Assembly: GCF_003918875.1 (NCBI RefSeq)
Contig: NW_025767096.1
Location: 372,001 to 436,000 of the forward strand
DNA length: 64,000 bases
Reading direction: 5' to 3'
Source of the DNA: Haliotis rubra
Taxonomy: Eukaryota
In this document: piece by piece, positions 33,444 through 44,917 of the stretch
How positions within the stretch are numbered: the stretch's first letter is position 1
Layout of the letters: each line of letters begins with the position of its first letter
Position numbers and translations under genes: made by a program
Notes under the pieces: generated by a model
The model's database searches: none
What the model saw: the letters and a program-made list of their open reading frames with translations, nothing else
What the model was told of the DNA's origin: nothing

Positions 33444-36400
33444 ATGGGTTTTCAGAACAAGGTAGACGACAACACTGTGCTATCATTATAGTCTGTTTGG
33501 AAGCCCAAGAATGTGGAAATGCTGTTCAATGCATAGCAAATCATCATTATAACATGAACTAGCAATATATGTCAAATTGAAAGCCCTTTCGTGCGTGTTC
33601 TGCTCGATAAGGCTCCACAACCCACGTGTGGTATAATATGGATACCGAATGTATGTGGAAGATCGCAAAGTCACAAATGGTTTAGTGAGGAATATGAGAA
33701 CAATATTTGTAGTAAACAGATTCAAAGTTTGTATCACCCTAAAAGTGTACAAGTCATGTACGTCAGTTATCTCTATTTATGACATGTCATTGAGGAGAAT
33801 TACTAAGTGCTACAACTTCGTGATACTTCACTGGGATCAGTTAGAAGATAACTCGTAGCAGGCCATAATTGCAGCTGTAGAATCCCTGTTCACGTCATTT
33901 ATTGCTTTATTCTTTACTTTCTTGAGATTTTTGAAAAAGCATTTGTGTACCATTTATCCAATTTAAGTCTGATAATTGGATGTATTGACTTAAAAATCAC
34001 GGTTTATTTGTATGCTTGATGATCTAAAGTTTAGTACTTTGTCTTTCATCATGGTAAATACTAAATACTAAATATTCTGTTAGGACAATCTGAAATAGCT
34101 CTATCTTCGGATAACCAGTTATTATTCGAGGGGCTAGAATGCACTTTACCGAAGCAGCCCTCGCTGCCCTTTACGATCCTTAGGGTTAGGGTATGGCACC
34201 CTTTACGATCGTTAGGGTTAGGGTTAGGAACCCCAGCAGCTTAATTAATCTGAAAAAGTGCCCGGTCAAGTGCAGTACTCCCCGAGGGGCTAGAATGCAC
34301 TTTACCGGCAGCCCTCGCTACTCCCCTTTACGATCCTTAGGGTTAGGGTATGGCACCCTTCACGATGCGTTAGGGTTAGGGTTAAGGAACCCCAGCAGCT
34401 TAATTAATCTGAAAAGTGCGCCCCCGGTCAAGTGCAGTACTCCCGAGGGGTTAGAATGCACTTTACCAGCAGCCTCTCTGCTCCCCTTCACGATCCTTAG
34501 GGTTAGGGTATGGCACCCTTTACGATCGTTAGGGTTAGGGAGTTAGGGAACCCCAGCAGCTAATTAATCTGAAAAAAGTGTACCGGTCAAGTGCAGTACT
34601 CCCGAGGGGCTGAGAATGCACTTTACATCGGCGCAGCCCCTCGCTACTCCCTTTTACGATCCTTAGGGTTAGGGTATGGCACCCTTTACGATCGTTAGGG
34701 TTAGGGTTAGGGAACCCCAGCAGCTTAATTAATCTGAAAAGTGCGCCCGGTCAAGTGCGAGTACTCCCGAGGGGCTAGAATGCACTTTACCGAGCGCACG
34801 CCCCTCGCCGTCTTTACGATCCTTAGGGTTAGGGTATGGCACCCTTTACGATCGTTAGGGTTAGGAGTTAGGAACCCCAGCAGCGCTTAATTAATCTGAA
34901 AAAGTGCGCTCGGTCAAGTGCAGTAACTCCCGAGGGGCTAGAATGCACTTTTACTGGAGCATTCCTCGCTACTCCCTTTACGATCCTTAGGGTTAGGGTA
35001 TGGCACCCTTTACGATCGTTAGGGTTAGGGTTAGGGGAACCCCAGCAGCTTAATTAATCTGAAAAAAGTGCGCCCGGTCAAGTGCAGTACTCCCGAGGGG
35101 CTAGAATGCACTTTACCGGTAGCAGCCCTCGCTGCTCCCTTTACGATCCTTAGGGTTAGGGTGGTATGGCACCCTTTACGATCGTTAGGGTTAGGGTTAG
35201 GGAACCCCAGCAGCTTAATTAATCTGGAAAAAAGTAGCCGGTCAAGTGCAGTACTCCCGAGGGGCTAGAATGCACTTTACCGGGAGCAGCCCTCGCTGCT
35301 CCCTTTACGATCCTTAGGGTTAGGGTATGGCACCCTTTACGCATCGTTAGGGTTAGGGTTAGGGAACCCCAGCAGCTTAATTAATCTGAAAAAGTGCGCC
35401 CGGTCAAGTGCAGTACTCCCCAGGGGCTAGAATGCACTTTACCGGCGCGTAGCCCCGCTCGCTCCCTTCACGATCCTTAGGGTTAGGTATGGCACCCCTT
35501 TACGATCGCTAGGGTTAGGTTAGGGGAACCCCAGCAGCTTAATTAATCTGAAAAAGTCGCCCGGTCAAGTGCAGTACTCCCGAGGGGCTAGAATGCACTT
35601 TACCGGCGCTAGCCCTCGCCAGTTCCCTCACGATCCTTAGGGTTAGGGTATGGCACCCTTTACGATCGCTAGGGTTAGGGTTAGGGAACCCCAGCAGCCA
35701 ATTAATCTGGAAAAGTGCTACCGGTCAAGTGCAGTACTCCCCGAGGGGCTAGAATGCACTTTACCGGCGCAGCCCTCCCTTTTACTGATCCTTAGGGTTA
35801 GGGTATGGCACCCTTTACGATCCAATAGGGTTAGGGTTAGGGAACCCCAGCAGCTTAATTAATCCTGAAAAGCCCAAAGCGCAGTCAAGTGCAGTACTCT
35901 ATCATGGCACATTCAGTTGTAAGAGAAACATTTGAACAGGTGAATTTGTATGTAATGGTCTAAGAATACTTATCAAGTTTTTTTTGTTATGAACTGATTG
36001 AGGTAGCTGACCAAACAAGTTGTCAATATTATATTGTCACAGCTTAACTGCGCTTTTCACATTTTAAAGTGTAACTACTAACAAATATAAACAAACAAAT
36101 TCTGCTGAACAGCGAAAGTGAACAATTAGAAGTTTACAGTTAAAACAAGCAGTCCAAACTGAAAATGTAAACCCATCTATAAATTTAAAGTAATGTAGTA
36201 CTAACAAAATGCAATTTAAATGTCAGCATTTGAAAGTGTATGTGAATATAATTCCATTGTCATTTGATTATTGTATGATGCCTATGAATGTCCTATCTCA
36301 TAGTCGTAGTGTATAGTTTTAGTTGAAGTCCTGTAAGTCTTGTCCATGCCACTTGATTATCTCATGCCCTATACACGTGATCAACCTGAATTGATATTGT

Positions 36401-39400
36401 TATAAGGAAACTGATGGTTATGTTTTTGCTTTCAGCCCATTTTGATTGATGCCCGAGGGCATCTGCTCGGGCGTCTGGCCTCAATTGTTGCCAAGACATT
36501 ACTGCAAGGTAAATATTGAACAGCTGGATGGGAACCAGTCATGTTCATAAAGAACAAAAGATTGGAGTTACTGAAATGATGATAATGTTATTCAACTACC
36601 CCAAGTATTTTAGGTACATGTTATACTGGTACCAAACTGAATATGGTATCCCATGATGACTTATCCTACATTGTCTGAATCATGACGATTACCAAAACCT
36701 GAGGAAATAACATATTCAGTATAGAAAATTGCCATTGAAGTTATTAAAAGTGTTTTATTGTCTTATTTTTTAAAGTTTAGTACTTTGTCTTTCATCGTGG
36801 TATTGGATAAATATTAGGGTACTTTGTCAGAACAAACTAATGCTGTTTTTTCAGTCATCAGACTGAAACAGAACATGCACCACAGAAACTGCAGTGAAAT
36901 GTTGGATGACAAATAATGATCGTAAGTGCAGGATTTGGTATCAGTTACATTGTATTTTCCAGGTCAACGAGTTGTTGTTGTACGATGTGAAGGCATCTGC
37001 ATATCTGGCAACTTCTACAGAAACAAATGTAAGTTTTTGATCTCAGTTATTGCAATAACCATGCATTTTGTTATGTCCATGTCAATAACATCAGAATATA
37101 CACACTAGTTCTAGACTTAAGCAACCTGTAAGTTGTATCTGGAATGCATGTGGCACATTACTATTTTGATGATAGTACCATTGTGGTAGTGAATATTTTG
37201 TTCAAGTGTATGCCTCAAAAATGATACATTGACAATATACAGTGTAAATGCTGTAAGCTTTCGAGGTACTCTTGCATGGCCATGAAGACAAGGTCTCGTG
37301 TTTTAAAATTTTGCAGATGGAATCTACATGGTAAATATTACGTATGTACAAATTCATTCCATTATATGTGATTGTAGACACTACATGAAGGTGGTGTATT
37401 TGTGACCTGTGCTAATTCCAACTGACCTTTGTGTTACAGTAAAGTACCTAGACTTCCTGAAGAAGCGATGCAACGTGAACCCTGCTCGTGGCCCGTTCCA
37501 CTTCCGGGCTCCCAGAATGATCTTCTGGAGGACTGTCCGAGGTACCTTTCAGCATTTGTGCTCAACTTAAACTGTGGCTTAGCTTTTTAATTTATAGGCT
37601 TAAGATGCAAGACAAGTTAAAGCAGGGAATGAAAGTGTTTCACATATTACAAATTTACAGGAAGATTAAAATGACCAGAATCCCAACATAAATGAAGTGA
37701 TGAAAAGTTGTCTAACTTTAACTTGTTCAAAGAATTGAATCAGTCATTTCCAGTGATGTCTTTACCTACATTGTCTGAAACCTGAAGACAATCACAGAAC
37801 TGAGGAAATGATATGGCAAAAGGATATTGTTTCACTCACTGGTGATACTTGTGCATGCCTTGATCGTAGGAATGTTCTTTAGCCCAGTTGTAGCATCCCT
37901 TGCTGTGATACTGTGGAATAACAGCATAAAACCATAATCGATCACTCACTCACTAAGAATATGTATTCAGTGAAGAGAGATATAAACCAGCTGTTTGTGT
38001 TGATTTGAGGAGAGGCGATTTTCAATTGTGGAGAAAGGATTTGAAATTTGATAGTGTCTATTTTCAAGCCATCTAATAAAAAAGCAATTGTAAATGTCAT
38101 GTTTTGAAATAATACACATCAGTTCTCTCCTGGTTGGTAGTTTCATTTTGGAAACACTGTGCTTGCATTATGACTTTCACTTTTTTTTTAAACTTCAAGT
38201 GAAGCAAAGAACAAATTTATTTTAATTTGTGGGGAAATTCATTCATTTGGTATGAATCTGTTACCCATAAATAGCATTCAAATTCCAATAAGAATTTAAC
38301 AGAAGCAATATGGATGTTGATGAGAAAATGTAGGTGCAGTGTGTCTCAAGCGTGATATATTACAAAGCCAGCAGTTTCTAAATGATGATTATCCTTACCT
38401 ACATTGAATAATTGTGAAAATAGTCAAAGTCTGATAGAAACTGCTGAACACAGCTCCAGATGAGTTGCGTATTTGCGTATAATACGCTATAGAAAAGTTG
38501 AAATACGGAAGAAATATAAATGCCAGCGTATGAAAAAACACTAAATATTTACGTTTACGCTATGTCAAAATAAGAATGCTTATTTGCCCAATATATCAAA
38601 ATTATGTTGGTATCGTATCAATTCAAGCCAATCGAAACAAACTTTTCCATCTCCAAATATTTGCGATCAGAATATTCTTGTATAATTCTAAACGCACTTA
38701 AGATGTGCAACGCAGATAGAATACCAGTTATAGTTTGTTAACTCTTCACTGATTGGCCAATCTATAAATAGCTACCAATGAAATAGCTGCTTCCTGCGTA
38801 CATGACCTGTAAACAAAGCAAGCATGGTCGAAAGCTTCCACACGCTCAAAGTAAAATATCTTGGATTTTTTGCTTTACAAACAGAAAACAACTTCATTTG
38901 AGGACTGCTAGATGAATTAATATTATCCTGTGTTTCACAATCAGAATCAGTTGCCGGAGATATCTTAAATGAACTTGTAACATTAGCTATTTGCGGCATG
39001 GAAGTGAAACAACACGATGGGAACATGGTTTTGAAAAAACCCAGTTGCTCCGTGGAAAAGAAAATATCCATGGTTAATTTTGAATAAAAAATGTCTTATG
39101 AAGTCATGTTGTAGTGTGTGTCAGGCACACCTCTCTTACACTTGTTATTTGAAATGAATACCCTGGATCTTAAAAATATGGTGGGTATCGAAAAGTATAG
39201 ATAACCACTTGAAATTGGAAATACCCACTTAGTTTAAATAGTATGGGTATCATACCCACATGGCCATAGGTTTTTCTGGCTCTCTGTGAACAACTGAGCC
39301 TTGTCAGAATGTCTGTCTTTCTAAACATTAGGCCTCAATCAGTTATCCAGAATCAGTTATCCAGTGTATGGCATCTCCATTCTAACATTACATTCCCATG

Positions 39401-42400
39401 ACACATTGACCACCATAGCTTTGTTTTTGGGGCTACTTTGGATGACATGATGCTAGAAATAGATGTCCAGTCAAATTAATCTGTTCATCCATGAGTTACA
39501 CAACCAGATGTATTGTCAGTCTTGTTGCCACATACACACCTGTCGTGTCTTGTTGCCAAAGGTCTTTCATCCTCTTTGTACTCCAGCTAAGAAATCTTTA
39601 AACAATTTGTGCAAGTACAAGTTTCAGTACAAGAGGGGCAGCCTAGTGGTTATAGCCTTCACTCAAGCTGACGACCCGGGTTCCAGTCCCCACATTGGTA
39701 CAATATGTGAAGCCCATGTCTGGTGTCCCCAGACGTGATATTGCTGAAATAGTGCCTAAGCGGCATAAAATGTAACTCACTCCAGTACAAGATTTAACTT
39801 GCATTTTGCAACCGGCCTGTAAAACATAACAACCCTCTATTGCTGCTGTTGTAGTAGGCAACTCTTATTGTCAAATAATATAGCTTGTCAATGATGTTTA
39901 TCCATCCCATAGCGTTTTGAAGTTGATGAAACCACTTCACATGCACTACCATCTGAGACAGCTATAAGATACAATTTGTAATGGCTGCTGCTATTGTTGG
40001 AATCCTTTTTCATTGTTTGGTTATCTTGGCTATTTTGTATTTAGCGTATCATCCCATAGTGTTTTGTCCACCATATAGCTGGACTATTGCCGAGTGTGGC
40101 GTAAAACTACACTCCCTCACTCATAGTGTTTTGTAGTTGATGACTTCACATGCACTACCTTCTCAGACATCTACAAAACTCCTTCATAATACAAAGTGCA
40201 TTGTTCAAAGCTATTCAGTGTTGGGAGTCTTGGTCATATTGTGTGTAGTGTATTGCCTAAATAGCCCCTTGAGACCCATTTCAGATGATGTTTGATACTG
40301 CATTTTCACATTGTTGCTCTAGTCAGAGCTTATGGTGGTTAAATGTATTGTTTGCATCTTTGGTTTATTGAAGTTATTGTCAGTTTTCAAGATATAGCTT
40401 GTCAATGATGTTTATCCATCCCATAGCGTTTTGAAGTTGATGAAACCACTTCACATGCACTACCATCTGAGACAGCTATAGAAAACGTTCATAATACAAA
40501 GTGTAATGGCTGCTGCTGCCATTGTTCAAGCTATCTATTCAGTGTTGGGGTGTCTTGGTTATTTTGTCTGTCTAAATAGCTCCTTGAGAACCATTTCAGA
40601 GGGTGTGGGGGTTAGCCTAGTGGCATAGGCATTCGTTCGCCATGCCAAAGACCCGGGTTCGATTCCGTAGGTTTTTGTGATGTGTGATGCCCATTTGTGG
40701 TTTCCTGCGCAGTGATATTGCCGGAATATTGCTAAAAGTGACGTAAAATCTCACTTGCCCATTCCTAATTGTGTTTGATACTGCATTTTCACATTATTGC
40801 TCAGGTCCGGAGTTATGGTAGCTGAATTGTTGATATTTGCATCTCTACTTTATTGAAGTTGTCACTTTTCAAGATATAGCTTGTCAATGATGTTTATCCA
40901 TCCCATAGCGTTTTGAAGTTGATGAAACCACTTCACATGCACTACCATCTGAGACAGCTGTAGAACTACCTTATAATACAAAGTGCTGCTGCCTCAGCCA
41001 TTGTTCAAGCTATTCAGTGTTGGGGTGTCTTGGTTATGTTGTCTGTAGTGTATTATCCAAGTAGTCTCTTGTGACCTGTTGTAGATATTGTTTTCACATT
41101 GTTATTCAGTGACTAGCTGAATTATTGATATTTGCATCTTTGCTTCTTAAAATGGGCTGTCATTTTTTTGAAGGTCCCTTGAAGATCCATTTTAGAAATA
41201 GTCACTATGGGGATCGGGTGGTGTGGCTGACTTGGTTTAAATCATTTTTGCGATGTAAGTGTTAGCGTGTTGCCCCTTGAATGATCCATTTTAGAAATAG
41301 TCACTAGCAACCCATGCTTGTTATAAATGCTCATGCTGTTGATCACTGGATTGACTGTCTGGTCAAGACTCAATTATTTGCAGACTGCCGCCATATAGCT
41401 GGAATCTTGCCGAGTGCGGTGTTAAACATCTTTTAAAGATGTAATGTCAATGATCCATCCCATAGCATTTTGAAATGATGAATACACTTCACATGCACTA
41501 CCATCTGAGACAGCTATAGAAAACGTTCATAATACAAAGTGTAATGGCTGCTGCTGCCATTGTTTAAAGCTATTCAGTGATGGGGTGTCTTGGTCATGTC
41601 TGTAGCAGGGATTTACAGGAAGCGAATTCCTGCGTCCTTTGTGCATAAAAATTGACAATGGACGCAGCAAAATATATTAGCGAGTCCACAGGGAGTCAGG
41701 AAAAGTCTGAACACTTTTTGTAAAAAATTCCAATCAAGTACAATACGTTATCACTGAGTTTGCTACTAGCTGGCTTATGGTATTATTTGCAATTTAATTA
41801 CTGTAACAATGTGATGATCTTGATACACAATACAGTAACAATACTAATAATAATATTTAAGTGTCTGGGACCCCCATTTTGTTGTCCAGGACCCCTGAAA
41901 ATTACGAGTATGAGTCCCAGGGACCCTCGAATATAGGGCTCCATGTAAATCCCTGCTGTTGTGTATTGTCTAAATAGCCCTTTGAAGCCTGTTGTAGATA
42001 TTGTTTTCACATTGTTTCTCAAATCAGAGATGACTAGCTGAATTATTTATATTTGTATCCTTGATTCTTAGAATGGGCTGTCAGTTTTTAAAGAAATAGC
42101 TTGTCAATGATGTTTATCCATCCCATAGCGTTTTGAAGTTGATGAAACCACTTCACATGCACTACCATCTGAGACAGCTATAGAAAACGTTCATAATACA
42201 AAGTGTAATGGCTGCTGCTTCCATTGTTCAAGCTATCTATTCAGTGTTGGGGTGTCTTGGTTATTTTGTCTGTCTAAATAGCTCCTTGAGAACCATTTCA
42301 GTGGGGTTGTGGGTTAGCCTAGTGGCATAGGCATTCGTTCGCCATGCCAAAGACCCGGTTTGATTCTGTAGGTTTTTGCAATGTGTGATGCCCATTTGTG

Positions 42401-44917
42401 GTTTCCTGCACAGTGATATTGCCGGAATATTGCTAAAAGTGACGTAAAACATATCTCACTTGCCCATTCCTAATTGTGTTTGATACTCCATTTTCACATT
42501 ATTGCTCAGGTCCCAAGTTATGGTAGCTGAATTGTTGATATTTGCATTTCTACTTTATTGAAGTTGTCACTTTTCAAGATATAGCTTGTCAATGATGTTT
42601 ATCCATCCCATAGCGTTTTGAAGTTGATGAAACCACTTCACATGCACTACCATCTGAGACAGCTGTAGTAATATGCCTGCCCCCTCTGTATCAAGAAACT
42701 AAGATAGTGCTCAGTTTTGTCATGAGTGTCTTGCCTAGGTAGACCCTTAGGTTAAAATACTTCATGGGACTTATGTGAGACATTGGGTAATTTATGAGTC
42801 TGCAACATGTGATCAAAATGAATTTTCAAATGAATTGTTAGACAGTTATTTTTTGTATGATGATCAGGTGTATATATCTTTATAAAAACCTGATTTAATC
42901 AGTACAGTCATAAGTGTGGTAGTGTAGCCCAGCGGTTAAAGTGTTCGCTTGACACACTGAAGGCCTGGGTTTATTCCCCACATGCGTACAGTGTGTGAAG
43001 CCCATTTCTGATGTCCCTGCTGTGATATTGCTAAAAGTGGTGTAAAACCCAACTCTCTCTCACTCAGTACAGTCATGTCACCACATATTGTCTAGCAGGG
43101 TTGAGAGCCTTGCATGTTCCTATTTGAAGTGTTGTCCAACATGAAATTTCTTTCTGCCACTTAGTTATAACATTTCCAGTGATGACTTTACCTACATTGT
43201 CAGAAACCTGAAGACAAACACAGAACTGAGGAAATGAAGTTATTGTAGTAAAATAATGTTAATCAATTCAGTGGTTATCTTTGTATTTCTCAGGAGTTGC
43301 CTTTAGTATTGAAATATATTGTGTCAGTGTCTATAAAGGTAACGGCAGTTCACCTTCATGACTCACTACAGCGACTTTCATGTTTTCTTGTAGGTATGCT
43401 CCCCCACAAGCAGCCTCGTGGCAAAGCTGCCCTCAGAAAGCTGAAGATGTTTGAGGGGATCCCTGGACCCTATGACAAGATGAAGAGGCAGGTTGTTCCC
43501 TCCGCTCTCAAAGTGCTTCGCCTGAAGCCAACAAGCAGGGTAAGACCGTGGTGCATTCAGTATTCCTTACTTGTAATAAATCCTCATTGCTTTATGTGGT
43601 CCAGGATTAAGAAAATTACCAAGCTCTGATGCAGCTTGAATTTTGCTTACCGTATATATCCCTCTCATTAACAGCTTATACTATCCACATGCTAAATCGA
43701 GGGTTACTTTCTCTTGAAATGTAATTGGTAAAGTAATTGTTAATAACTCAAGGTGTCCACACCTGATGATCTGAACACTCACTTCATGTTGTATAATTCC
43801 CTGTCTGAAGTATCATGCTTTGAGGAGATTCTGTTGAAAACTTGTCTGTGATGTTTACTCATCCCATAGCGTTTTGAAGCTGATGAAAAAGCTTTTACAT
43901 GCACTACCATCTGAGACAAGCTCAGACTTTCCACCATTGTCTCATGCCAGTGGGGACACGTTGTGATGCAGTGTTTGTGTTCCAGTACTGTCAGCTGGAC
44001 CGCCTGTCAAGTGAGGTTGGCTGGATGTACCAGGGAGTGGTGGCCAAGCTTGAAGAAAAGAGGAAGGTCAAATCAAATGATTACTTCAAGAGGAGGAAGT
44101 CCACCCTTGTAAGTTCTAATCCTAAGTGGAGTTGTTTATCATCTTAATTGTGCCAGTGTTTGCTGACAGCATGTTGGACATTTCTGATGACTGTTCATAT
44201 CCAAGCAGCATGAATTTGTCAATTTGTGGCTTGAGTGAGACTATCAGAATTAATTTTAGTTATAGCGCAGATTAGAAAAGTGCTTGAATATTCCCATCTC
44301 AAATTTACCTGAAAGTACATTGCAGCTTAGCACACGGAGAAAATAAGATTGAAGTGTTGACAAACTTTCATGCAAACAATTTGGACACAATGTTTAGTTT
44401 TTGACAAAAGGGTTTCCTTTCCTTAATGATTGCTTACCTGTGTACCTCGTTGGTCAGTGATGATAAAAACCTGGTATTGAAATTGATGAAAAGAGCAACA
44501 TGCACTACCAGCTGAGACTGACAGGAATGGGTGTACTTGTGCAAATGTAGAACGTTTAGATGTTTAATGACTGCAGGCACTGCAGACACAAAATTCATGT
44601 GCCTTCTGACCAAGTTGTGAAAAAGTATCACAGATGTAACTTTCATTTCAAATATAATATACAGATCTATCTTAGAACTGTTGATACTCTCTTAACGACC
44701 CTTGAAACTTATAAGCAATTGGTAGATAACCTCAAACTATAATGTACCCAACCATAATTAATTGAAGTCTTCAGTTGTGGTCAGAGGTCTTGCAACCCAG
44801 GGCATGAGCTTGATATCCTCTTGTCTGTTACAGCGTCTCCGAGAACAAGCCAGGAAAAATGTCCAACCCAAGGTCAAGAAACAGCAACAACTTATCGAGA
44901 GCTGTGGGTACCAGTGA
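33444..44917 (+). CDS. RPL13A: 60S ribosomal protein L13a (uL13), 203 aa
   Basis: Exons 33444-33461, 36436-36508, 36963-37028, 37440-37541, 43394-43539, 43986-44108, 44834-44917 (612 nt). [26 protein letters not shown]...[12 protein letters not shown]...GMLPHK...[10 protein letters not shown]...[13 protein letters not shown]...EVGW. AATAAA at 44934-44939. Confidence 0.98.
34127..35900. repeat. Satellite of 11 x ~160-bp units containing TTAGGG telomeric hexamers and nested inverted repeats, in RPL13A coding intron 1
   Basis: Unit starts near 34127, 34283, 34444, 34603, 34768, 34931, 35094, 35258, 35421, 35581, 35742. Each unit has TTAGGG x2 and TTAGGG x3 blocks. Confidence 0.95.
36636..36720 (+). 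ncRNA. SNORD34: Box C/D snoRNA, SNORD34 (U34)-like, RPL13A coding intron 2
   Basis: C box ATGATGA 36653, guide CCTACATTGT + D' CTGA, C' ATGACGA, D CTGA 36699, extended stem actgaatatg/catattcagt. ACCTACATTGT is the recalled U34 guide against 28S ACAAUGUAGGU. Confidence 0.8.
37744..37811 (+). ncRNA. SNORD34: Box C/D snoRNA, SNORD34-like
   Basis: Stem tcatttcc/ggaaatga, C GTGATGT, guide TTACCTACATTGT + D' CTGA, C' CTGAAGA, D CTGA 37800. Confidence 0.85.
38369..38446 (+). ncRNA. Box C/D snoRNA, SNORD34-related with shifted guide
   Basis: Perfect 12-bp stem cagcagtttcta/tagaaactgctg, C ATGATGA 38382, guide CCTTACCTACA + D' TTGA, C' GTGAAAA, D CTGA 38431. Confidence 0.75.
39886..39960 (+). ncRNA. 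SNORD33: Box C/D snoRNA, SNORD33 (U33)-like, array copy 1
   Basis: tgtc-A-ATGATGT...CACATGCACTACCAT-CTGA-gaca. The 3' end matches the recalled human U33 end, and the guide pairs with 18S UGGUGGUGCAUG. Confidence 0.88.
40047..40169 (+). pseudogene. Decayed SNORD33-like copy 2, split by a SINE 3' fragment
   Basis: No C box, D box mutated (tctca). SINE tail 40068-40121 is flanked by a 13-bp TSD catagtgttttgt. Confidence 0.75.
40400..40474 (+). ncRNA. SNORD33: SNORD33-like array copy 3
   Basis: Identical to copy 1; stem atagcttgtc/gacagctat. Confidence 0.88.
40882..40956 (+). ncRNA. SNORD33: SNORD33-like array copy 4
   Basis: Identical to copy 1. Confidence 0.88.
41445..41512 (+). ncRNA. SNORD33: SNORD33-like array copy 5 (C box damaged by a short deletion)
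   Basis: ATGATCC in place of ATGATGT; D guide and D box intact. Confidence 0.6.
41606..41955. mobile_element. hAT-like MITE inserted in a spacer of the snoRNA array
   Basis: TIR cagggatttaca/tgtaaatccctg; flanks ctgtag/ctgttg; the spacer sequence resumes after it. Confidence 0.75.
42102..42176 (+). ncRNA. SNORD33: SNORD33-like array copy 6
   Basis: Identical to copy 1. Confidence 0.88.
42587..42661 (+). ncRNA. SNORD33: SNORD33-like array copy 7
   Basis: Identical to copy 1. Confidence 0.88.
43171..43236 (+). ncRNA. SNORD34: Box C/D snoRNA, SNORD34-like (paralog of the 37744 copy)
   Basis: Stem catttcc/ggaaatg, C GTGATGA, guide TTACCTACATTGT + D' CAGA, D CTGA 43226. Confidence 0.85.
43841..43920 (+). 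ncRNA. SNORD33: SNORD33-like, diverged paralog in RPL13A coding intron 5
   Basis: Stem cttgtc/gacaag, C GTGATGT. Both guides conserved (TCATCCCATAGCG; ACATGCACTACCAT-CTGA). D box ~70 nt upstream of the acceptor. Confidence 0.88.
44453..44518 (+). ncRNA. SNORD33: SNORD33-like single-guide variant in RPL13A coding intron 6
   Basis: gtc-A-GTGATGA...TTGA...TTGATGA...ACATGCACTACCAG-CTGA-gac. Confidence 0.8.

What the first reader, a model, noticed from the sequence alone, without database searches (positions are those of the whole stretch)
37542..43393. Polycistronic box C/D snoRNA array in one ribosomal-protein intron: seven SNORD33-like and three SNORD34-like copies
Seen: RPL13A coding intron 4 (5.85 kb) contains a tandem ~490-650-bp unit carrying a 75-nt C/D snoRNA. 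Copies at 39886, 40400, 40882, 42102 and 42587 are identical, while the adjacent spacers differ by many substitutions and indels. One copy is SINE-disrupted and one has a damaged C box. Block ~40375-40960 is re-duplicated at ~42076-42665, including the same SINE. Known: vertebrate RPL13A hosts U32-U35 at one snoRNA per intron, released by debranching and exonuclease trimming. Inference: the host-snoRNA link is ancient, the copies are under purifying selection or gene conversion (dosage amplification), and ten snoRNAs in one intron need endonucleolytic separation, recursive splicing or cryptic NMD exons. That would be an unusual processing mode for animal C/D snoRNAs.
Basis: partly seen in the sequence, partly recalled or inferred. 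Interest (0 to 1): 0.85.

Follow-up and report, generated by a model that had tools for sequence, protein, structure and literature searches.

The report
Abalone RPL13A intron snoRNA array
One 5.85-kb intron of an abalone ribosomal-protein gene (uL13/RPL13A) really does carry ten methylation-guide snoRNA genes; three other abalone species have the same cluster, so it is real and under selection, but several snoRNAs in one intron is a known layout and how they are cut apart is untested.

Summary
Intron 37542-43393 splits uL13 residues 86/87 and has GT/AG ends. It holds five 100% identical SNORD33-family genes (Rfam 55.2 bits, cut-off 44), one copy with a damaged C box, one copy split by a SINE, and three SNORD34-like genes.

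The identical block is 84 nt, exactly the snoRNA plus its terminal stem. The flanks differ at 9-23% of sites. The guides fit this genome's own rRNA at the SNORD33 site (18S) and the SNORD34 site (28S).

It is not an assembly artefact. Haliotis cracherodii, H. rufescens and H. asinina carry 6-10 snoRNA genes in the same intron. Between species, only exons and snoRNAs are conserved in the gene.

The uL13 genes of Babylonia, Biomphalaria and Tegillarca also have introns with several snoRNAs. The hemichordate Saccoglossus has one per intron.

So the host link is ancient and selection is real. "Unusual for animals" is overstated: intronic snoRNA clusters are described in rice and Drosophila, and they look widespread in molluscs. 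Earlier notes of this scan flag other multi-copy snoRNA introns in this genome.

Release of the inner copies by endonucleolytic cuts is a reasonable inference, but nothing here tests it. Products capped by a snoRNA at each end (sno-lncRNAs), as in mouse Rpl13a, remain a live rival.

Verdict: new member of a known kind.

The parts
37440..37541 (+). uL13/RPL13A coding exon 4 (residues about 53-86)
   Evidence: PDB phmmer hit to uL13 residues 53-85, E=5e-13. Matches P0109.
37542..43393 (+). Intron 4, 5852 nt with GT...AG ends, holding the snoRNA cluster
   Evidence: Read. The flanking exons are adjacent in uL13.
37745..37810 (+). SNORD34-like C/D snoRNA, copy A1. Its D' guide pairs 12/12 with own 28S and places the methylation at U2158.
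   Evidence: Rfam 37.1 bits, cut-off 38. Guide scan. Terminal stem of 9-11 bp.
38374..38441 (+). SNORD34-like paralog B. Same 28S stretch, guide register shifted 3-4 nt, 12-bp terminal stem.
   Evidence: Rfam 34.3 bits.. Conserved in L014, L015 and L016.
39640..39790 (+). tRNA-derived SINE copy upstream of the first SNORD33-like gene (approximate bounds)
   Evidence: Self-BLAST to 42926-43036 and 40650-40755. Read.
39884..39962 (+). SNORD33-family snoRNA, intact copy a
   Evidence: Rfam 55.2 bits. D guide has 11 Watson-Crick pairs plus 1 G-U pair with own 18S, methylation at U1320.
40040..40172 (+). Decayed SNORD33-like copy, split by a SINE-tail insertion with a duplicated target site. D box reads CTCA.
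   Evidence: Read. 83% identity to the intact copy over 53 nt.
40398..40476 (+). SNORD33-family snoRNA, intact copy b
   Evidence: Rfam 55.2 bits.
40606..40765 (+). tRNA-derived SINE in the b-c spacer. It was duplicated together with the block.
40880..40958 (+). SNORD33-family snoRNA, intact copy c
   Evidence: Rfam 55.2 bits.
41443..41514 (+). SNORD33-like copy with a deletion in and after the C box, plus substitutions. Probably inactive.
   Evidence: Rfam 43.2 bits, under the cut-off of 44. 92% identity over 63 nt. Alignment.
41606..41955 (.). About 350-bp insertion with 12-nt terminal inverted repeats (MITE-like) in the d-e spacer
   Evidence: Read directly. Not tested further.
42100..42178 (+). 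SNORD33-family snoRNA, intact copy e (recent duplicate of b)
   Evidence: Rfam 55.2 bits..
42310..42465 (+). SINE copy duplicated from 40606-40765
42585..42663 (+). SNORD33-family snoRNA, intact copy f (recent duplicate of c)
   Evidence: Rfam 55.2 bits..
43171..43236 (+). SNORD34-like snoRNA, copy A2. 95.5% identical to A1. Lies 157 nt upstream of the 3' splice site.
   Evidence: Rfam 34.0 bits. Self-BLAST. Guide 12/12.
43394..43539 (+). uL13 coding exon 5 (residues 86-135)
   Evidence: PDB phmmer hit to uL13 residues 87-132, E=6e-17. Splice sites read.
43841..43920 (+). Single SNORD33-family paralog in intron 5. 87% identical to the array copies, with the same two guides. Lies 65 nt from the 3' splice site.
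   Evidence: Rfam 53.5 bits..
44450..44521 (+). Single SNORD33-family gene in intron 6. Same 18S guide, different 5' half.
   Evidence: Rfam 43.7 bits..
36647..36709 (+). Weak SNORD34-like C/D snoRNA in intron 2. By eye its guide pairs about 9 consecutive bases with the same 28S stretch.
   Evidence: Rfam 30.3 bits for SNORD34 and 29.2 for sR14. 78.6% identity to A1/A2. My guide scan returned nothing for it at its thresholds; the 9-bp pairing is my reading of the sequence.

Best explanation
This is a genuine, selected cluster of box C/D snoRNA genes in one intron of the blacklip-abalone-type uL13 (RPL13A) gene.

How it arose: an ancestral set of SNORD34-like and SNORD33-family genes in intron 4 grew by unequal crossing-over and segmental duplication. 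The window now has 5 intact and 2 decayed SNORD33-type copies and 3 SNORD34-type copies.

What it does: all copies are transcribed as part of the host pre-mRNA. The intact copies guide 2'-O-methylation of 18S U1320 (the SNORD33 site) and 28S U2158 (the SNORD34 site), in this genome's own numbering.

How it is most likely processed (inferred, not shown): each unit folds its long 9-12-bp terminal stem and assembles a snoRNP regardless of its distance from the branch point. The excised intron, or the nascent transcript, is cut by an endonuclease in the unprotected spacers. Exonucleases then trim each piece back to its snoRNP. This is the route used by plant and Drosophila intronic clusters and yeast polycistrons. 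A XendoU/EndoU-type enzyme is a candidate; the genome encodes several.
For: Identity and targets:
- Rfam gives SNORD33 at 55.2 bits five times, plus SNORD34-like hits.
- The guides pair with the genome's own rRNA: 11 Watson-Crick plus 1 G-U pair on 18S, and 12/12 on 28S.
- This RNA occurs nowhere else in the 1.38-Gb genome.

Selection:
- The 84-nt core is identical in five copies while flanks differ at 9-23% of sites.
- The recent duplicate shows 16 changes in 398 nt of spacer and 0 in 168 nt of snoRNA.
- The two copies that lost a box have drifted to 92% and 83% identity.
- Across four abalone species the copies differ by only 1-3 nt, all at positions outside the boxes, guides and stem.
- Between species the snoRNAs (96-99% identity) are better conserved than the coding exons (90-96%), and nothing else in the intron is conserved.

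Not an artefact: independent assemblies of H. cracherodii, H. rufescens and H. asinina carry 10, 10 and 6 snoRNA genes in the same intron.

Same habit elsewhere: Babylonia has about 8 in one uL13 intron, Biomphalaria 4 and Tegillarca 2.

Processing:
- Array copies have 9-12-bp terminal stems. The single intron-5 paralog has a stem of about 6-7 bp and sits at the classical 65 nt from the 3' splice site.
- Splicing-independent endonucleolytic release is documented, with Rnt1 in yeast and XendoU in Xenopus (PMC10557570).
- XendoU-domain exons are found at five or more loci in this genome.
Against: - No RNA data were available. Neither expression of the about 80-nt RNAs nor any cleavage is shown.
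- In mammals, two snoRNAs in one intron give a stable RNA capped by a snoRNA at each end, not two free snoRNAs. One example comes from Rpl13a itself (PMC4234469).
- No conserved cleavage motif or hairpin was found in the spacers.
- Seven genes share the same 18S guide, which sits oddly with strong selection on every single copy. Within-species sharing of states at free positions hints that gene conversion or turnover also contributes.
- The three SNORD34-like hits in the window fall just below Rfam's cut-off.
Confidence: 0.6

Rival explanations
1. The intron is trimmed only by exonucleases. It therefore yields one or several long RNAs capped by a snoRNP at each end (sno-lncRNAs), and few or no free inner snoRNAs. 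The inner copies would then be conserved for a role inside such an RNA, or as alternative caps.
For: Mouse Rpl13a makes exactly such an RNA when SNORD33 and SNORD34 fall into one intron (PMC4234469). The general rule is reviewed in PMC11028025. In the window, SNORD34-like genes sit at both ends of the cluster, at 37745 and 43171.
Against: The inner copies keep perfect guides, boxes and stems, as working methylation guides do. In H. cracherodii and H. rufescens the last gene of the cluster is a SNORD33 type, so the 'SNORD34 caps' layout is not conserved. The spacers, which would form the body of such an RNA, are not conserved.
Confidence: 0.2
2. The 5.85-kb interval is removed in several steps, by recursive splicing or through small non-coding 'poison' exons between units. 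Each snoRNA then effectively has its own intron, as in the SNORD115/116 host transcript.
For: It would reconcile the array with the one-snoRNA-per-intron rule. snoRNA host transcripts are known targets of nonsense-mediated decay (cited in PMC10557570).
Against: No spacer block of 45 nt or more at 90% identity or more is shared between abalone species, apart from the snoRNAs, SINE fragments and one 82-nt spacer stretch (40199-40280, 91%) shared with H. asinina only. The flanks of 20 units cannot be aligned. The annotated 203-aa product joins exon 4 directly to exon 5. Splice sites need little sequence, so this rival is disfavoured, not excluded.
Confidence: 0.12
3. Each unit is an independent gene with its own promoter inside the intron, so no release from the host intron is needed.
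For: Independently transcribed intronic small RNAs exist in some invertebrates. This rests on my own recollection and I checked no paper for it.
Against: The 120 nt upstream of the 20 intact units share no conserved motif within or between species. All copies lie on the host's sense strand.
Confidence: 0.05
4. The array is an assembly artefact or neutral junk duplication without function.
For: Tandem repeats are prone to mis-assembly, and two copies are visibly decayed.
Against: Three other species' assemblies show the same cluster, with orthologous first and last units. The contrast between core and spacer rules out neutrality.
Confidence: 0.03

Closest known systems
Vertebrate RPL13A snoRNAs U32/U33/U34/U35 (SNORD32A, 33, 34, 35A)
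   Same: Same host gene, same Rfam families (RF00133, RF00147), and the same guide elements and rRNA sites for SNORD33 and SNORD34.
   Different: Mammals keep SNORD33 and SNORD34 in separate introns (PMC4234469). Abalone has 6-10 in intron 4, plus singles in introns 2, 5 and 6. No SNORD35-like hit was seen.
Intronic snoRNA gene clusters of rice and Drosophila melanogaster
   Same: Several snoRNA genes, often tandem isoforms, lie in sense inside one intron of a host gene. The organisation is named in PMC2780460 (citing Liang 2002 and Huang 2004/2005) and listed as a class in PMC11028025.
   Different: This one is in a mollusc and in a ribosomal-protein gene, with ten box C/D genes. From memory, the Drosophila clusters are mostly H/ACA. 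I could not read the primary papers because they are not held.
Mouse Rpl13a-region sno-lncRNA and the Prader-Willi-region sno-lncRNAs
   Same: Two or more C/D snoRNAs in one excised intron. One case involves the same host gene and the same two families.
   Different: In mouse this arises only through alternative exon skipping, and the product is a stable snoRNA-capped RNA. In abalone the shared intron is constitutive and the product is unknown.
SNORD115/SNORD116 tandem arrays
   Same: Tandem amplification of one C/D snoRNA with birth-and-death turnover and copy-number change between species.
   Different: Those arrays have one snoRNA per intron of a repeated non-coding host exon unit. Here there are no exons between the units and the host codes for a protein.
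Yeast and plant polycistronic snoRNA precursors (Rnt1/RNase III route) and XendoU-dependent release of Xenopus U16/U86
   Same: They supply the only documented ways to free a snoRNA without relying on intron ends: an endonucleolytic cut followed by exonuclease trimming (PMC10557570).
   Different: No Rnt1-type stem-loop or conserved U-tract was identified in the abalone spacers. Enzyme involvement is speculation.

Membership tests
Rfam RF00133 SNORD33/SNORD32/Z195 family | Covariance-model score at or above the gathering cut-off (44 bits) | tested here: met
   55.2 bits for five copies and 53.5 for the intron-5 copy. The decayed copy scores 43.2 and the intron-6 copy 43.7, both just below.
Rfam RF00133 SNORD33/SNORD32/Z195 family | Guide upstream of box D complementary to the 18S site of SNORD33 | tested here: met
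   11 Watson-Crick plus 1 G-U pair with own 18S. The fifth base from box D faces U1320. The guide is identical to the Rfam consensus. Equivalence to human U1326 rests on the consensus, not on an rRNA alignment.
Rfam RF00147 SNORD34 | Covariance-model score at or above the gathering cut-off (38 bits) | tested here: inconclusive
   The window copies score 37.1, 34.3 and 34.0. The copy at the position of A1 in the three other Haliotis species reaches 38.5-38.6.
Rfam RF00147 SNORD34 | D' guide matching the family consensus and the 28S target | tested here: met
   The consensus guide stretch is matched letter for letter in A1. Pairing with own 28S is 12/12, with methylation at U2158. Copy B uses the same stretch in a shifted register.
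Box C/D snoRNA (general) | C box RUGAUGA-like, D box CUGA, internal C'/D' boxes, and a 5'-3' terminal stem | tested here: met
   Boxes read. Terminal stems of 9-12 bp.
Box C/D snoRNA (general) | Accumulates as a discrete small nucleolar RNA bound by fibrillarin, NOP56, NOP58 and SNU13 | not testable with these tools
   No RNA or protein data available.
Intronic snoRNA gene cluster | Two or more snoRNA genes within one intron, on the sense strand of the host | tested here: met
   Ten genes lie between the GT at 37542 and the AG at 43393, all on the + strand.
Intronic snoRNA gene cluster | Individual mature snoRNAs are released from the common intron | not testable with these tools
   Inferred only from selection on the inner copies.
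sno-lncRNA | Stable intron-derived RNA ending in a snoRNA at both ends | not testable with these tools
   The precondition, two snoRNAs in one intron, is met. Accumulation is unknown.

The most novel reading that the evidence does not exclude
Molluscs routinely free many box C/D snoRNAs from a single pre-mRNA intron. They would do so through a dedicated endonucleolytic, splicing-independent pathway like that of plants, which bilaterian animals are generally thought to use only marginally. The abalone RPL13A intron, with ten genes, orthologous clusters in four species and internal decayed controls, would be the natural test substrate. A variant of this reading is that the intron also yields a family of snoRNA-capped long RNAs.
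Probability: 0.4. Interest if true: 0.55.

Novelty: new member of a known kind. Interest (0 to 1): 0.42.

Why it matters
- It extends the RPL13A-SNORD33/34 host relationship from vertebrates to molluscs and a hemichordate. That makes it one of the older known pairings of a snoRNA with its host gene.
- It shows that the "one snoRNA per intron" rule is broken again and again in mollusc uL13 genes.
- It offers a clean natural experiment on what keeps a snoRNA gene alive: identical intact copies, decayed copies and fast-drifting spacers side by side, repeated in four species.
- It is also a substrate for asking how animals release snoRNAs that cannot be reached by trimming from the intron ends.
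- It is not a new kind of element.

Tried and rejected
- Tandem Repeats Finder found no array. The spacers are too diverged, so the units had to be defined by Rfam and self-BLAST.
- A Pfam L13 search of the genome did not pick up this gene exon by exon. It hit another contig, probably the mitochondrial L13.
- Two PDB searches failed on a wrong reading frame and were corrected.
- The Rfam SSU search of the whole genome gave no answer. rDNA was found with a short conserved 18S pattern instead.
- Conserved spacer motifs, promoters, hairpins or cryptic exons: none found in 20 aligned units or in between-species BLAST.
- Huang et al. 2005 (PMC1370813) is not held, so the Drosophila clusters are cited second-hand.
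- A literature search for mollusc snoRNA clusters found nothing relevant.
- The scallop uL13 and the H. rubra record could not be fetched.
- The exons were searched one by one, by reference. I did not build or search a joined spliced protein. Stored database proteins (P0109, P0001, P0110) were used for exon mapping instead.
- No contig looked human.
- Assembly artefact and neutral duplication were considered and rejected (see the rival explanations).
Full report
**What is there**

The window is a piece of a 1.38-Gb, 2855-contig genome. Its uL13 exons equal the Haliotis rubra RefSeq product P0109, including residues that differ in three other abalone species. The H. rubra record itself is withheld by the look-up tool. 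I therefore take the window to be blacklip abalone or something very near it.

The exon ending at 37541 matches uL13 residues 53-85 of solved ribosome structures. The exon starting at 43394 matches residues 87-132. The interval begins with GT at 37542 and ends with AG at 43393. I searched the exons one at a time and did not join them.

**The snoRNA genes**

- Rfam at its curated threshold finds five SNORD33-family genes inside the intron, at 39884, 40398, 40880, 42100 and 42585. All score 55.2 bits against a cut-off of 44.
- At a relaxed threshold it adds a copy at 41443 (43.2 bits). This copy has lost part of its C box.
- It also adds three SNORD34-like genes at 37745, 38374 and 43171 (37.1, 34.3 and 34.0 bits, cut-off 38).
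- A seventh SNORD33-like copy at about 40040-40172 is split by a SINE tail flanked by a duplicated target site. Its D box is mutated.
- Outside this intron the gene carries a weak SNORD34-like RNA in intron 2 (36647). It carries single SNORD33-family genes in intron 5 (43841, 53.5 bits) and intron 6 (44450, 43.7 bits).
- A BLAST of the 79-nt RNA against the whole genome finds it only here.

**Targets**

I located the genome's own rDNA and scanned the guides against it.

- The D guide of all SNORD33-type copies pairs with 18S by 11 Watson-Crick pairs and one G-U pair. It places the methylation on U1320. The guide is letter for letter the Rfam consensus.
- The two A-type SNORD34-like copies pair 12/12 with 28S and point at U2158.
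- Copy B uses the same 28S stretch shifted by 3-4 nt.
- The conserved 5' half of the SNORD33-type RNA pairs with a second 28S stretch by 10 Watson-Crick and 2 G-U pairs. This is only a candidate, because a match of that quality is not rare by chance.

**Is the conservation more than chance?**

- The five intact copies are identical over 84 nt. That is the Rfam hit plus 4 nt upstream and 1 nt downstream, which is exactly the RNA with its extended terminal stem.
- In the 120 nt on either side, pairs of units differ at 9-23% of aligned sites and by many indels. The chance of no substitution in 84 nt is 3e-4 to 3e-10 per pair.
It shows 16 differences in 398 nt of spacer and none in 168 nt of snoRNA (P about 0.001).
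- The two copies that lost a box have drifted to 92% and 83% identity. They serve as a built-in control. Homogenisation alone would have carried them along, so selection on intact copies is the main force.

**Other species**

The uL13 genes of H. cracherodii (L014), H. rufescens (L015) and H. asinina (L016) come from independent chromosome-scale assemblies.

| Species (locus) | SNORD33-type genes in intron 4 | SNORD34-like genes in intron 4 |
|---|---|---|
| Window (H. rubra-like) | 5 intact + 2 decayed | 3 |
| H. cracherodii (L014) | 6 | 4 |
| H. rufescens (L015) | 6 | 4 |
| H. asinina (L016) | 3 | 3 |

Counts are; the intron bounds come from exon mapping.

- The single intron-5 and intron-6 genes are also present in all three species.
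- From the alignment of unit flanks, the first unit looks orthologous in all four species. The middle and last units look orthologous between the window and H. asinina.
- The cluster therefore predates these species and is not an assembly artefact.
- Array copies differ between species by only 1-3 nt, all at positions outside boxes, guides and stem.
- Those free positions are uniform within a species group. In one case they differ between orthologous units of the sister species while matching paralogs. This hints at some gene conversion or turnover on top of selection.
- Between species, the blocks of 90% identity or more in the gene are the exons (90-96%) and the snoRNAs (96-99%). The exceptions are SINE fragments and one 82-nt spacer stretch shared with H. 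asinina only.

**Wider comparison**

- Saccoglossus (a hemichordate) has SNORD34, SNORD33, SNORD33 and SNORD33 in four successive-looking introns, one each.
- Babylonia has three SNORD34-like genes in intron 3, two in intron 4, and about eight in intron 5 (three SNORD33 type and five SNORD66-like).
- Biomphalaria has one SNORD34 and three SNORD33 genes in one 11-kb intron.
- The ark clam Tegillarca has two SNORD33-like genes in its last intron.
- Capitella has a compact gene with none inside.
- The host link is therefore ancient, and several snoRNAs per intron is a molluscan habit, not a peculiarity of this window.
- Earlier notes of this scan report multi-copy snoRNAs in single introns of other genes of this genome. 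I did not check them.

**How it probably works**

*Shown:* the genes, their targets, selection on them, and their age.

*Inferred:* the processing. Trimming from the intron ends would stop at the outermost snoRNPs, so the inner copies need something more.

- In mouse, SNORD33 and SNORD34 fall into one Rpl13a intron through exon skipping. The result is a stable RNA capped by a snoRNA at each end (PMC4234469; general rule in PMC11028025).
- The inner abalone copies behave like working guides under selection. I therefore favour release by endonucleolytic cuts in the spacers followed by exonuclease trimming.
- That route is documented for yeast (Rnt1) and Xenopus (XendoU) (PMC10557570).
- Two details fit this. 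The array copies have 9-12-bp terminal stems. The single intron-5 paralog has a shorter stem and sits 65 nt from its 3' splice site, the classical position for splicing-coupled assembly. The link between long stems and position-independent assembly rests on my knowledge of the mammalian literature.
- XendoU-domain exons exist at five or more loci of this genome. This is only a plausibility check.
- Against cryptic exons, recursive splice sites or internal promoters: nothing in the spacers is conserved within or between species.

**Comparison with what is known, and verdict**

Several snoRNAs in one intron is a named organisation. [quoted passage not shown] I found no paper on it in molluscs.

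The finding is therefore a correct observation and a well-supported new member of a known kind. It has a nice evolutionary depth, and the question of its processing is open and testable.

Noticed in passing
window 34100-35900: A G+C-richer tandem array lies just upstream of uL13 exon 2. The 34001-36000 bin reaches 50% G+C, and the repeated units give the same peptide-like strings in all three frames. Another note of the scan places it in intron 1.
   Followed up: no
window 38374-38441: SNORD34-like paralog B keeps the SNORD34 guide stretch but has no CUGA after it. With the nearest D'-like box, the predicted methylation moves 3-4 nt, to 28S about G2161-2162. It is conserved in three other abalone species.
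   Followed up: partly
window 39884-39962 and 43841-43920: The 5' half of the SNORD33-type RNA is invariant in 24 of the 25 aligned copies from four species; only the decayed copy at 41443 differs, at one base. It pairs with own 28S at about 1350-1361 by 10 Watson-Crick and 2 G-U pairs, so it is a possible second guide. The match alone is not statistically strong.
   Followed up: partly
window 39640-39790, 40606-40765, 42310-42465, 42920-43060; fragments at 40068-40107 and 41388-41427: Four copies and two tail fragments of a tRNA-derived SINE lie inside the intron. One fragment split a snoRNA copy, and another sits right before the copy with the damaged C box.
   Followed up: partly
window 41606-41955: A 350-bp insertion with 12-nt terminal inverted repeats (MITE-like) lies in one spacer.
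   Followed up: no
L017 7991-14755 (Babylonia areolata uL13 intron 5): About eight snoRNA genes lie in one intron: three SNORD33 type and five SNORD66/ceN106-like. The latter family is absent from the abalone gene.
   Followed up: partly
G000 contigs C1191, C2001, C2278, C2289, C2356: XendoU/EndoU-domain exons occur at five or more loci, some apparently in tandem clusters.
   Followed up: no
L019 2501-2579 (Capitella teleta): A weak SNORD34-like hit lies just downstream of the compact, snoRNA-free uL13 gene.
   Followed up: no
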